A stretch of 64,000 nt of DNA from positions 9,300,001 through 9,364,000 of the forward strand of contig NW_027362767.1 of assembly GCF_046119375.1 (NCBI RefSeq), read 5' to 3'. Of this stretch, positions 398 to 3,300 are shown piece by piece. The position numbers were made by a program, and so were the translations under genes. Position 1 is the stretch's first letter. Every line of letters starts with the position of its first letter. This DNA is from Phyllobates terribilis (taxonomy: Eukaryota). The notes below the pieces were generated by a model. That model searched no databases. It worked only from the letters and a program-made list of their open reading frames with translations, and was not told the DNA's origin.

Positions 398-3300
398 CTG
401 AGGGAAAGAGAGAGAGAGATAAAGCTACAGCAGTGCAGCAGGACCCTCACTACCCCACCAAACACAGGGGGCCACACACCTGAGTAGGGGCTCCATTCCT
501 ATGTAAAATCTCCACCACGCGATGGAAGCCGACGGGAGCTTTCTTCTTGGTGTACCCCAGCCAGTTCTGAGGAGACAAAGTAGGCGTTAGTCCTACCGGT
601 AATTGGTTTTCCAGGAGTCCATCATGACAGCACCATCAGGAGGTCCTTCATATCCTTGATAGGACAGGAATACACAACAGGTTAAAAGACCCCTCCCTCC
701 ACCAACCACCAGTGATTTTCCAAGTACCACACTAGGATGGATCTACTTTCCTTCTACAACCCCTGGCAAAAATTATGGAATCACCGGGCTCGGAGGATGT
801 TCATTCAGTTGTTTAATGTTGTTGAAAAAAAGCAGATCACAGACATGGCACAAAACTAAAGTCATTTCAAATGGCAACTTTAGGGCTTTAAGAAACACTA
901 AAAGAAATCAAGAAAAAAAATGTGGTACTCAGTAAGGGTAATTTTTTCAGACCAAGCAGAGGGAAAAAATTATGGAATCACTCAATTCTGAGGAAAAAAA
1001 TATGGAATCACTCTGTAAATTTTCATTTCCAAAACTAACATCTGCATCAAATTAGATCTACTCGTTAGTCTGCATCTAAAAAGGAGTGATCACACCTTGG
1101 AGAGCTGTTGCACCAAGAGGACTGACATGAATCATGGCTCCAACACGAGAGATGTCAATTGAAACAAAGGAGAGGATTATCAAACTCTTAAAATAAGGTA
1201 AATCATCACGCAAATGTTGCAAAAGATGTTGGTTGTTCACAGTCAGCTGTGTCTAAAATCTGGACCAAATACAAACAACATGGGAAGGTTGTTAAAGGCA
1301 AACATACTGGTAGACCAAGGAAGACATCAAAGCCTCAAGACCAGAAACTTAAAGCAATAGGTCTCCAAAACAGGAAACGCACAACAAAACAAATGAGGAA
1401 CGAATGGGAGGAAACTGGAGTCAATGTCTGTGACCGAACTGTAAGAAAAAGCCTAAAGTAAATGGGATTTACATACAGAAAAGCTAAACATAAGCCATCA
1501 TTAACACCTAAACAGAAAAAAACAAGGTTACAATGGGCTAAGGAAAAGCAATCGTGGACTGTGGATGACTGGATGAAAGTCATATTCAGTGATGAGCCGC
1601 GAATCTGCATTGGGCAAGGTGATGATGCTGGGACTTTTGTTTGGTGCCGTTCCAATGAGATTTATAAAGATGACGGCATGAAGAGAACATGGAAATTTCC
1701 ACAGTCATTGATGATATGGGGCTGCAGGTCAGGTAAAGGCACTGGGGAGATGGCTGTCATTACATCTTCAATAAATGCCCAAGTGTACATTGATATTTTG
1801 GACAGTTTTCTTATCCCATCAATTGAAAGGATGTTTGGGGATGATGACATCATTTTTCAAGATGATAATGCATCCTGCCATAGAGCAAAAACTGTGAAAA
1901 CATTCCTTGAAAGAAGACACATAAGGTCAATGTCATGGCCTGCAAATAGTCCAGATCGCAATCCAATTGAAAATCTTTGGTGGAAGTTGAAGAAAATGGT
2001 CCCTGACAAGGCTCCAACCTGCAAAGCTGATCTGGCAACAGCAATCAGAGAAAGTTGGAGCCAGATTGATGAAGAGTACTGTTTGTCACTCATTAAGTCC
2101 ATGCCTCAGAGACTGCAGGCTGTTATTAAAGCCAGAGGTGGTGCAACAAAATACTAGTGATGTATTGGAGTGTTCTTTTGTGTGTTTGTTTTCATGATTC
2201 CATAATTTTTTCCTCAGAATTGAGTGATTCCATAATTTTTTTCCCTCTGCTTGGTCTGAAAAAAATTACCCTTACTGAGTACCACATTTTTAATCTTGAT
2301 TTCTTTTAGTGTTTCTTAAAGCCCTAAAGTTGCCATTTGAAATGACTTTAGTTTTGTGCCATGTCTGTGATCTGCTTTTCTTCAACAACATTAAACAACT
2401 GAATGAACATCCTCCGAGCCCGGTGATTCCATAATATTGCCAGGGGTTGTACATACGTTACCTTCATATCGCAGACAGGAATTATAGGCAGGAAATGTAA
2501 TGGGTGCTGTCATGATGGACTCCTGGAAAACCAATTACCGGTAGGACTAATGCCTACTTTCCAGGACATCCCTCCTAACAGCACCACCAGGAGAATACCA
2601 GGGGATACATTCAGAGCGGGACTACTCTTTGGAGGACTTTCCTCCCGAAGGCCAACTTTTGGCCAGATGAAATGTACAGTTTATAATGTCTGCAAATGAT
2701 GTTAAGATTCGTCCATGTAGCAGCTCTGCAAATCTGGTCCACTGAGGCTCCTGCTCGCTCGGCCCATAATGTGGCTACTGCCCTAGTAGAATGGGCTCTT
2801 GTGTTGTCCGGCGATTTCCCTTCTGCTGAATAGGTCTGGCTGATCACTGACCGAATCCATCTTGCCAAGTCTCCTTTGACGTCCTCTTCCCTCTATCCCT
2901 TTGATGTCGATAGTGTTCCAGTACTAAGAAGAGGGGTGACAGACTAAATAATTAAAAAAATAGAAAGAACTCAGGTGGATTTATGAATTAGGGTCTTTAC
3001 AACCTGAGGGCTTGAATACTGAATACAATTTGAAGGTTTGTCTGTTTTAATTACCCTCTTCATCATCGGTATTTATTGTCATTTTATCATGTGATTTCTT
3101 ACTGCGTCTTATTTTCTACAGATGGTTTTCTGGATCTGATTGGAGATGATCGGACACGAGGACGGGGACTGAATTTGGAACACATTTGGATTAACCATTG
3201 TGGAAACAATGTATATGTTTATTAAACGTGTGTTTCTTTTTGTGTTCCCCTTTCCTTTGTTGTCCGTTGTCTCCAATCTGATGTGCTATTGTTTCTTTAA

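What the first reader, a model, noticed from the sequence alone, without database searches (positions are those of the whole stretch)
567..600. A DIRS terminus appears to supply the branch point of a VIPAS39 intron
Seen: the DIRS end (577) lies only 10 nt from the exon-16 acceptor. On the transcribed strand the join reads ...GGA-CTAAC-GCCTAC-TTT|GTCTCCTCAG|AAC, placing a consensus CTAAC with its A at -21 wholly inside the element. The native intron sequence that once preceded the acceptor (...CCCATCATAGTCTCC) is now 10.3 kb away at 10845 and beyond. The single mismatch between this terminus and its internal complementary copy (2503-2560) is at this motif: CTAAC at the terminus versus CTAAT internally. 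Established: the branch consensus is YTNAY, 18-40 nt upstream of AG, and DIRS elements insert at T runs without a TSD. Inference: the insertion was tolerated in a conserved trafficking gene because the element brought its own branch point, so DIRS ends could act as portable 3' splice-site modules.
Basis: partly seen in the sequence, partly recalled or inferred. Interest (0 to 1): 0.75.

Follow-up and report, generated by a model that had tools for sequence, protein, structure and literature searches.

The report
Retrotransposon end supplies an intron's branch site
In a frog VIPAS39 gene, the end of a decayed DIRS retrotransposon sits 10 bases before a conserved exon that is still spliced correctly, so the element must supply the intron's branch site; this is a rare, tidy example of a known effect, not a new mechanism.

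Summary
The sequence facts at 567-600 hold. A DIRS1-like element ends at 577. Its last 58 nt pair 57/58 with an internal copy at 2503-2560, and other genomic copies lose similarity exactly at 577.

That end lies 10 nt upstream of the acceptor of exon 480-566 (minus strand). Spliced contigs from two studies join this exon to exon 11018-11107 at exactly this acceptor. A bird orthologue has the same three exon boundaries around a 382-nt intron, so the acceptor predates the insertion.

The branch site must therefore lie in the element. gACTAAC (A587, -21) is the only YTNAY in the last 69 nt. An unused AG at -27 argues against a branch far upstream.

Three parts of the reading are not supported:
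- The C/T mismatch is at a CpG, so decay of the internal copy explains it. CTAAT also fits the consensus.
- The element does not reach 10845. It is a gutted copy (gag N-part, recombinase C-half, no RT) whose recognisable sequence stops near 6182. Its predicted left end is absent from the intron.
- "Portable 3' splice-site module" rests on one case, and the terminus carries no AG.

TE-derived branch and pyrimidine signals are already known. The scan had not noted this before.

The parts
11018..11107 (-). Upstream exon ('exon 15'), 90 nt, [30 protein letters not shown]; donor GT at 11017-11016
   Evidence: Translation and flanking splice signals. RNA contig loose end after 568 equals window 11020-11049. 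The bird orthologue has the same 30-codon exon.
567..11017 (-). The intron, 10,451 nt, against 382 nt in a bird orthologue
   Evidence: Exon junction in RNA contigs of runs X7 and X8; bird locus L004.
480..566 (-). Downstream exon ('exon 16'), 87 nt, [29 protein letters not shown]
   Evidence: Spliced on both sides in RNA contigs: joint 395/478 (cut +2) and loose end at 568. 86% identical to the bird peptide.
567..576 (-). The only non-element intron sequence before the exon: GTCTCCTCAG (3' half of the pyrimidine tract plus the acceptor AG at 568-567)
586..590 (-). CTAAC branch-site candidate (gACTAAC, 6 of 7 of TACTAAC), branch A at 587 = -21
   Evidence: It is the only YTNAY within 69 nt of the AG. 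No AG lies between it and the acceptor, and 15 of 18 bases between are pyrimidines. Use as a branch point is inferred, not shown.
577..634 (-). DIRS right terminus (right extension plus divergent ITR), ending in TTT (579-577)
   Evidence: 57/58 complementary to 2503-2560. Other copies align from exactly 577. The architecture matches Xenopus DIRS1-like elements (PMC3266345).
635..754 (-). Right ITR, outer part, up to the nested Tc1
   Evidence: Multi-copy. It aligns with other copies in two species, and in those copies the Tc1 is absent (X18 joint 742 to 2486).
757..2449 (+). Nested Tc1/mariner element in the right ITR, flanked by TA (755-756 and 2450-2451), 179-nt TIRs 98% alike, 231-aa transposase ORF at 1462-2157
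   Evidence: Loose ends of other copies at 754/755 and very high contig depth.
2452..2502 (-). Right ITR, inner part
2503..2600 (-). Internal complementary region: right ICR 2503-2560, circular-junction AAA 2558-2560, left ICR about 2558-2600
   Evidence: In a second species, a joint running from 2593 back to 645 shows the family's left terminus is built from this sequence. Model from PMC3266345 and PMC7192593.
2614..2868 (-). Tyrosine-recombinase C-terminal tail (…RAHSTRAVA…), stop at 2611-2613
   Evidence: 59% identical to recombinase tails on contigs that also carry RNase H/methyltransferase or the SAM-like recombinase N-domain. Weak Pfam Phage_integrase match.
2869..4229 (-). About 1.36 kb of foreign sequence splitting the recombinase, including a 33-bp tandem array at 3569-4001
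   Evidence: Low-copy depth in organism A, none in organism C.
4230..4442 (-). Recombinase middle part (…[23 protein letters not shown]…); the N-terminal half and RT/RH/MT are missing
4600..5718 (-). DIRS gag N-terminal part in two pieces (zinc ribbon 5518-5718; 4600-5043), split by a 19-bp tandem array (about 4924-5645)
   Evidence: 115 homologues, the best carrying the LAP2alpha domain (PF11560) just downstream. In P0020 the two pieces are contiguous, residues 68-118 and 124-263. The LAP2alpha domain derives from DIRS1 gag (PMC4495291).
6141..6182 (-). Possible left-ITR remnant: 42 nt, 88% identical to 680-721 in inverted orientation
   Evidence: score 64 against a shuffled maximum of 43. 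The flanks do not align, so the true left end is unresolved.

Best explanation
A sense-oriented, internally deleted DIRS1-like retrotransposon integrated by its usual 3-bp (TTT) recombination into the pyrimidine tract of an ancient VIPAS39 intron. It keeps the gag N-part, the C-half of the tyrosine recombinase, the ICR and the right ITR. Its right terminus now sits 10 nt (10-13 allowing for the crossover) upstream of the acceptor. The native branch site and the upstream tract were displaced by kilobases. The spliceosome now uses signals carried by the last 20 or so nt of the element: most likely A587 in gACUAAC at -21, pairing with U2 snRNA, followed by a hybrid pyrimidine tract (CGCCUACUUU from the element, GUCUCCUC from the host) and the native AG. 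Shown: the element boundary, the use of the acceptor in RNA, and the age of the intron position. Inferred: which adenosine is the branch point, and that the motif is why the insertion survived. CTAAC is probably the family's original state, and the CTAAT in the internal copy is probably later CpG decay.
For: Terminus: 57/58 complementarity with the ICR ends exactly at 577/2560. Two other genomic copies align from 577 and then diverge, and depth rises from about 6.5 to about 1800. TTT end, AAA junction and a 58-nt right ICR match XtDIRS2/3. Splicing: contigs of X7 and X8, from two studies, join 566 to 11018 and remove 398-479; no other acceptor appears among the joints listed. Carrier status: an X7 contig covers the locus-specific ITR/Tc1 junction (635-780, 1 difference). 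Ancient acceptor: the bird locus L004 has the same 90/87/90-nt exons, a 382-nt intron and TTAAC at about -24. Branch candidate: CTAAC is the only YTNAY in the last 69 nt, the AG-free stretch runs -26 to -2, and 15 of 18 bases are pyrimidines. The unused AG at -27 argues against a branch site far upstream. In PMC7951965, citing Mercer 2015, 90% of human branch sites lie 19-37 nt from the 3' splice site. CpG: the mismatch at 586 lies in one of two CpGs of the arm, and the ICR templates the termini, so the two were identical at insertion.
Against: No lariat evidence; vertebrate branch points are degenerate and often multiple. The contigs show presence only, so minor mis-spliced isoforms would be invisible. 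It is not proven that the RNA comes from the insertion-bearing allele. No empty-site orthologue was obtained, so the pre-insertion sequence and the left junction are unknown. The letter at 586 and 2551 in other copies was not shown by the reads tool, so the ancestral state rests on the CpG argument alone.
Confidence: 0.75

Rival explanations
1. The branch point is in the element but not at CTAAC: a non-consensus adenosine in -15..-40 (for example A588 or the As around -35 to -41), or the CTGAT at -70, is used instead or as well.
For: Vertebrate branch sites are degenerate and often multiple (general knowledge). A second YTNAY lies at -70.
Against: CTAAC is the only consensus match in the canonical window and pairs best with U2. 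A branch at -70 would place the AG at -27 as the first downstream AG, yet only the AG at -1 is seen in RNA contigs.
Confidence: 0.15
2. After insertion, a T-to-C change at the terminus was selected because it improved the branch site. On this view CTAAT is ancestral and CTAAC derived.
For: The only mismatch in 58 nt lies in the motif. A crude U2 duplex is stronger with C, -5.2 against -2.7 kcal/mol.
Against: The site is a CpG, so CG-to-CA/TG decay in the ICR copy is the much commoner mutation in a methylated vertebrate genome. With one mismatch, 5 of 58 positions (about 9%, more with CpG weighting) fall in the motif by chance. CTAAT also satisfies YTNAY.
Confidence: 0.1
3. The insertion is polymorphic or harmful: the correctly spliced mRNA comes from alleles lacking the element, and the carrier allele is mis-spliced.
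For: The RNA and DNA runs are from different samples, and contigs hide minor forms.
Against: Runs from three DNA samples hold 64-85% of the sampled words of 1-760. The RNA sample X7 contains the locus-specific ITR/Tc1 junction and intronic contigs with 0-1 differences. No alternative acceptor appears among the listed joints.
Confidence: 0.05
4. 577-634 is ancestral intron, or the join is an assembly artefact, not an element end.
For: None found.
Against: The sequence is multi-copy in two species, with copies ending at 577. A short-read contig bridges 250-634 with 2 differences. The stretch is complementary to the ICR of a recombinase-bearing element.
Confidence: 0.01

Closest known systems
DIRS1-like retrotransposons of anurans (XtDIRS2/XtDIRS3; Repbase DIRS-n_XT families)
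   Same: Recombinase gene next to the ICR. Right ICR of about 60 nt complementary to the right terminus. Termini TTT with circular junction AAA. ITRs of 100-200 nt. Gag with the LAP2alpha-type domain in relatives. RT/RNase H/methyltransferase upstream of the recombinase in relatives.
   Different: This copy lacks RT/RH/MT, the recombinase N-half, most of gag and a recognisable left terminus. It carries a nested Tc1, two tandem arrays and 1.36 kb of foreign sequence.
TE-derived branch site, pyrimidine tract and 3' splice-site signals in exonised TEs and pathogenic pseudoexons (for example AluY in CEP290, LTR78 in F8, an L1 fragment giving part of a branch sequence in GPR143; PMC7951965)
   Same: A transposed element contributes the branch sequence and part of the pyrimidine tract that the spliceosome uses.
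   Different: Those cases create new, mostly aberrant or alternative exons. Here the element replaces the signals of a pre-existing, conserved, constitutive exon without changing the mRNA.
TE under-representation zones next to exons (Zhang, Romanish and Mager 2011, PMC3088655)
   Same: The insertion lies in the most hazardous class: sense orientation and less than 20 bp from a splice acceptor.
   Different: In mammals such insertions are nearly absent among fixed TEs and frequent among disease alleles. This one coexists with normal splicing.
TMPO/LAP2alpha and ZNF451: DIRS1 gag co-opted as an alternative 3' exon (PMC4495291)
   Same: A DIRS1-like element inside a host gene interacts with host splicing.
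   Different: There the element's coding sequence became an exon. Here only non-coding terminal sequence is used, as intron signals.

Membership tests
DIRS1-like retrotransposon (order DIRS) | Encodes a tyrosine recombinase | tested here: met
   Only the C-terminal half is present (4230-4442 and 2614-2868, with an HSTR motif). It is 46-59% identical to recombinases on contigs L001-L003.
DIRS1-like retrotransposon (order DIRS) | RT / RNase H / methyltransferase ORF | tested here: not met
   tblastn with the RH-MT ORF of L001 finds nothing in the window, and no RT ORF lies in 2600-10900. Relatives with the same recombinase tail do carry RT_RNaseH and a weak Dam match. This is read as an internal deletion in this copy, not as exclusion from the family.
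DIRS1-like retrotransposon (order DIRS) | Right ICR complementary to the right terminus, meeting the left ICR at a 3-bp circular junction | tested here: met
   577-634 against 2503-2560 is 57/58; junction AAA with terminal TTT. The definition is from PMC3266345.
DIRS1-like retrotransposon (order DIRS) | Inverted terminal repeats, and a left terminus complementary to the left ICR | tested here: not met
   Only a 42-nt, 88% remnant at 6141-6182. The predicted left terminus is absent from 5600-11020. The left end of this copy is truncated or destroyed.
DIRS1-like retrotransposon (order DIRS) | Gag of the DIRS1 type (LAP2alpha-like domain) | tested here: inconclusive
   The N-terminal gag region is present and homologous to proteins whose next domain is PF11560. 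The PF11560 part itself is mostly deleted here.
DIRS1-like retrotransposon (order DIRS) | Integration without target-site duplication, at a trinucleotide identical to the junction | tested here: inconclusive
   The right junction is ...TTT|GTCTCC, consistent with this. The left junction was not identifiable and no empty site was available.
TE-supplied splice signals for a host exon | TE boundary lies between the acceptor and the canonical branch-point window | tested here: met
   The terminus at 577 is 10 nt from the exon.
TE-supplied splice signals for a host exon | The acceptor is used in mature RNA | tested here: met
   Exon 15/16 junction in contigs of X7 and X8.
TE-supplied splice signals for a host exon | Branch point mapped inside the TE | not testable with these tools
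   This needs lariat reads spanning 11017 and about 587. Only contigs and a stretch of at most 6 kb were available.
VIPAS39 (VPS16B/SPE-39) orthologue | Sequence similarity to VIPAS39 and conserved neighbourhood | tested here: met
   The exon at 15673-15804 is 89% identical to a bullfrog partial protein carrying PF04840 (Vps16_C). A bird protein has ...[24 protein letters not shown]... contiguous. Neighbouring exons carry a TSP1 domain and a weak, sub-threshold aminotransferase-class match. The name VIPAS39, and reading those neighbours as ISM2-like and SPTLC2-like, rest on my recollection of the human proteins and of the 14q24 gene order.

The most novel reading that the evidence does not exclude
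The right extension of this frog DIRS family (…gACTAAC-GCCTACTTT) is a ready-made branch site plus the start of a pyrimidine tract. Because the family integrates at TTT, it lands in pyrimidine tracts unusually often. Sense-oriented copies a few bases from acceptors would then be systematically tolerated, and detectable genome-wide as an excess relative to other TE families. Elsewhere, copies could seed new 3' splice sites wherever an AG follows.
Probability: 0.1. Interest if true: 0.55.

Novelty: new member of a known kind. Interest (0 to 1): 0.33.

Why it matters
Fixed transposon insertions within 20 bp of a splice acceptor are almost absent from mammalian genomes and are over-represented among disease alleles (PMC3088655). 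This locus is a natural experiment. The branch site and half the pyrimidine tract of a conserved, constitutively spliced exon have been swapped for transposon sequence, and the mRNA is unchanged. It gives a concrete substrate for a lariat assay and a minigene test of how little native sequence a vertebrate 3' splice site needs. It also suggests a simple genome-wide test of whether TTT-targeting DIRS families behave differently from other TEs near acceptors. It does not reveal a new mechanism.

Tried and rejected
- **Empty site in a related species.** The DNA run of organism C (X18) gave zero depth over the unique 250-471, so only repeats were assembled and nothing could be learned.
- **Bullfrog orthologous contig.** P0003 is not on record. 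Its gene model also skips the two exons of interest.
- **Other copies of the terminus.** There are none in the window and none in metagenome contigs. The findings index by sequence was blank.
- **Letter at 586 and 2551 in other copies.** It is not among the rows the reads tool printed, so the ancestral state could not be read directly.
- **Left boundary.**
  - The predicted left terminus is absent.
  - MAFFT of 6040-6340 against the right ITR aligns only the 42-nt island.
- **Pfam and PDB on single exons.** There were no useful hits. For exon 15, searches used 11019-11108, which is one base off and so the wrong frame; the correct range is 11018-11107.
- **The 148-aa gag piece.** The atlas and word searches found nothing. 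The exhaustive search then resolved it.
- **Rejected: a Crypton DNA transposon instead of DIRS.** Relatives of the recombinase tail sit next to RNase H/methyltransferase, and the ICR/terminus architecture is DIRS-specific.
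Full report
**What is at 567-600.** The gene lies on the minus strand. Read on that strand, the sequence is ...ACCGGTAGGA-CTAAC-GCCTAC-TTT|GTCTCCTCAG|AACTGGCTG....
- The exon is 480-566: 87 nt, [29 protein letters not shown], with donor GTGTGT.
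- The next exon is 308-397.
- The previous exon is 11018-11107, [30 protein letters not shown].
- The intron is therefore 567-11017, 10,451 nt.

**Is 577 an element end?** Yes, on three lines of evidence.
- 577-634 is 57/58 complementary to 2503-2560, and the complementarity stops exactly at 577/2560.
- Contigs of a DNA run of the same species were laid at 80% likeness or better.
  - The unique flank has a depth of about 6.5.
  - The bin starting at 583 has a summed depth of about 1800.
  - Two other contigs align from exactly 577 to 742, with 11-17% differences, and continue into unrelated flanks.
  - A 452-nt short-read contig bridges 250-634 with two differences.
  - A second species (organism C) also carries the family, including copies without the nested Tc1.
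- The anatomy is that of a DIRS1-like element as defined by Piednoël et al. 2011 (PMC3266345).
  - A tyrosine-recombinase gene ends at 2614.
  - It is followed by left and right ICRs meeting at a 3-bp junction (AAA, 2558-2560).
  - Then comes the right ITR, then a terminal extension ending in TTT.
  - Xenopus XtDIRS2 and XtDIRS3 have the same AAA junction and right ICRs of 61-65 nt; XtDIRS3 has TTT at both termini, XtDIRS2 TTT and TAT. Here the right ICR is 58 nt.
- Integration recombines the 3-bp junction with an identical target triplet, without duplication. The boundary is therefore ambiguous within 577-579, and a T-rich pyrimidine tract is a natural target.

**What kind of copy it is.**
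- The recombinase tail (2614-2868, …RAHSTRAVA…) is 59% identical to tails on public contigs. The upstream ORFs of those contigs carry RT_RNaseH plus a weak Dam-methyltransferase match, or the SAM-like recombinase N-domain.
- Only recombinase residues equivalent to about 210-286 (4230-4442) and the tail are present. They are split by 1.36 kb of foreign sequence that includes a 33-bp array.
- There is no RT, RNase H or methyltransferase, and no recombinase N-half.
- Upstream, two pieces (5518-5718, a zinc ribbon, and 4600-5043) are the N-terminal part of a DIRS gag.
  - The exhaustive protein search gave 115 homologues.
  - The best of them carry the LAP2alpha domain (PF11560) immediately downstream.
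  - In one homologue the two pieces are contiguous.
  - That domain is known to derive from DIRS1 gag (PMC4495291).
- A 19-bp tandem array separates the two gag pieces.
- A Tc1 element (757-2449, TA-flanked, TIRs 98% alike) sits in the right ITR.

**Where the element ends on the left.** I could not support that.
- The family's left terminus can be predicted from the left ICR (TTTCCAGGACATCC…). A joint in organism C confirms the prediction, since it links 2593 to 645.
- That sequence is absent from 5600-11020, with the best local score at shuffle level.
- The only further DIRS-like sequence is a 42-nt, 88% inverted match of 6141-6182 to 680-721. It lies about 420 nt upstream of the gag zinc ribbon, which is where a left ITR belongs.
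- The recognisable element therefore spans 577 to about 6182. Its outermost left end is lost.
- The 4.6 kb from there to 10844 holds a second Tc1-like element (8869-10471) and other repeats of unknown history.
- The shared hexamer GTCTCC is expected by chance in 10 kb.

**Is the acceptor used, and is it old?**
- Two runs from different studies (X7, X8) contain spliced contigs.
  - Intron 398-479 is removed.
  - At the other side of the exon the contigs leave the genome after 568 and continue TGGTGGTGAACAGAGCG…, which is window 11020-11049. The two bases CT are shared by both sides, so the join is 566|11018.
  - No other acceptor appears among the listed joints.
- The X7 sample also holds a contig across the locus-specific ITR/Tc1 junction (635-780, one difference). 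That individual therefore carries the insertion.
- In a bird orthologue (L004), the three exons have the same lengths and boundaries (90, 87 and 90 nt). The intron is 382 nt with TTAAC at about -24.
- The intron position therefore predates the split of amphibians and amniotes, and hence predates the insertion.
- Gene identity:
  - Another exon (15673-15804) is 89% identical to a bullfrog partial protein with PF04840 (Vps16_C).
  - The bird protein has the exon 15-16-17 peptides contiguous.
  - The name VIPAS39, and the reading of the neighbouring exons as ISM2-like and SPTLC2-like, rest on my memory of the human proteins and gene order. One search shows a TSP1 domain and only a weak, sub-threshold aminotransferase-class match.

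**Branch point.**
- Only 10 nt of host sequence precede the AG, and the rest of the native intron is kilobases away. The branch site must therefore be in the DIRS terminus.
- Within the last 69 nt, CTAAC is the only YTNAY.
- With the preceding A it matches 6 of 7 positions of TACTAAC.
- 15 of the 18 bases between it and the AG are pyrimidines, and no AG intervenes.
- The nearest upstream AG is at -27 and is not used. A branch far upstream (for example CTGAT at -70) would make that AG the first one downstream of the branch.
- The two neighbouring introns have one YTNAY each, at -27 and -23.
- Chance levels in this window are 23% for any YTNAY at -18..-40, 0.45% for CTAAC and 0.16% for ACTAAC. 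A usable motif is therefore unremarkable, while so strong a one is uncommon.
- Which adenosine is used remains an inference.

**The mismatch.**
- The terminus reads CTAAC-G. The complement of the ICR reads CTAAT-G.
- The differing base (586) is the C of one of only two CpGs in the 58-nt arm.
- The ICR templates the termini during replication (PMC7192593), so the two were identical at insertion.
- Methyl-CpG decay in the ICR copy is the simplest explanation.
- Both versions satisfy YTNAY, although a crude U2 duplex favours C.
- The reads tool did not print the state of other copies at these positions, so this stays an argument and is not a measurement.

**Comparison with what is known.**
- TEs contributing the branch sequence, pyrimidine tract or 3' splice site are documented for exonised TEs and pseudoexons (PMC7951965).
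- TE insertions that add or remove branch-point competitors are known (PMC7969005).
- DIRS1 gag has been co-opted as an exon in TMPO and ZNF451.
- What is unusual here is the class of site. In mammals, fixed TEs within 20 bp of an acceptor are nearly absent and such insertions are typically pathogenic (PMC3088655).
- This is a rare and clean example of a known kind, not a new mechanism.
- The idea of a "portable 3' splice-site module" is untested. The terminus has no AG and there is one case.

**Limits.**
- There was no lariat evidence, no empty-site orthologue and no genome-wide census.
- All runs were contigs, so levels and minor isoforms are invisible.
- Whether the insertion is fixed was not established.
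- I built no consensus and no repaired version of the element.

Noticed in passing
window 11150-15560: A 4.4-kb GC-rich minisatellite (units of about 21 and 28 nt) fills the next intron upstream. It produces spurious open frames of about 1,500 codons on both strands.
   Followed up: no
window 757-2449 and 8869-10471: Two Tc1/mariner elements lie in the same intron. The first has a 231-aa transposase ORF and 98% identical 179-nt TIRs. Its family has an enormous summed contig depth in two frog species and is also present in the RNA-type runs, including an internally deleted form (joint 781 to 2251 in X7 and X8).
   Followed up: partly
window 3569-4001 and 4924-5645: Two tandem arrays (33-bp and 19-bp units) have expanded inside the DIRS copy, one within the foreign segment that splits the recombinase and one within gag.
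   Followed up: no
window 2470-2913 and 583-693 (read laying depth): ITR and ICR sequence has about ten times the summed contig depth of the recombinase tail in both species. This suggests many short or non-autonomous derivatives that keep only the cis ends.
   Followed up: no
protein P0003 (bullfrog partial model): The bullfrog gene model joins ...ALFTTK directly to TYKDLKDR..., skipping the peptides of exons 480-566 and 308-397. This could be an annotation or assembly gap, or a real difference; I did not resolve it.
   Followed up: no
window 55947-56156 and 62774-63621 (minus strand): There is a thrombospondin type-1 repeat exon (ISM2-like). There are also exons with a weak aminotransferase-class match that look like the 3' end of SPTLC2. 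This gives the same gene order as human 14q24.3, from memory.
   Followed up: partly
L002 868-969: A distant DIRS family from another public run has an ICR sharing the core TACCGGTAA…TTTTCCAGGAGTC with this element. The palindromic TTACCGGTAA may be a conserved recombination or annealing box.
   Followed up: no
same genome, other pieces (earlier notes): Several first-stage notes report a 91-94-nt GT-AG intron inside DIRS gag in this genome. I did not examine them here.
   Followed up: no
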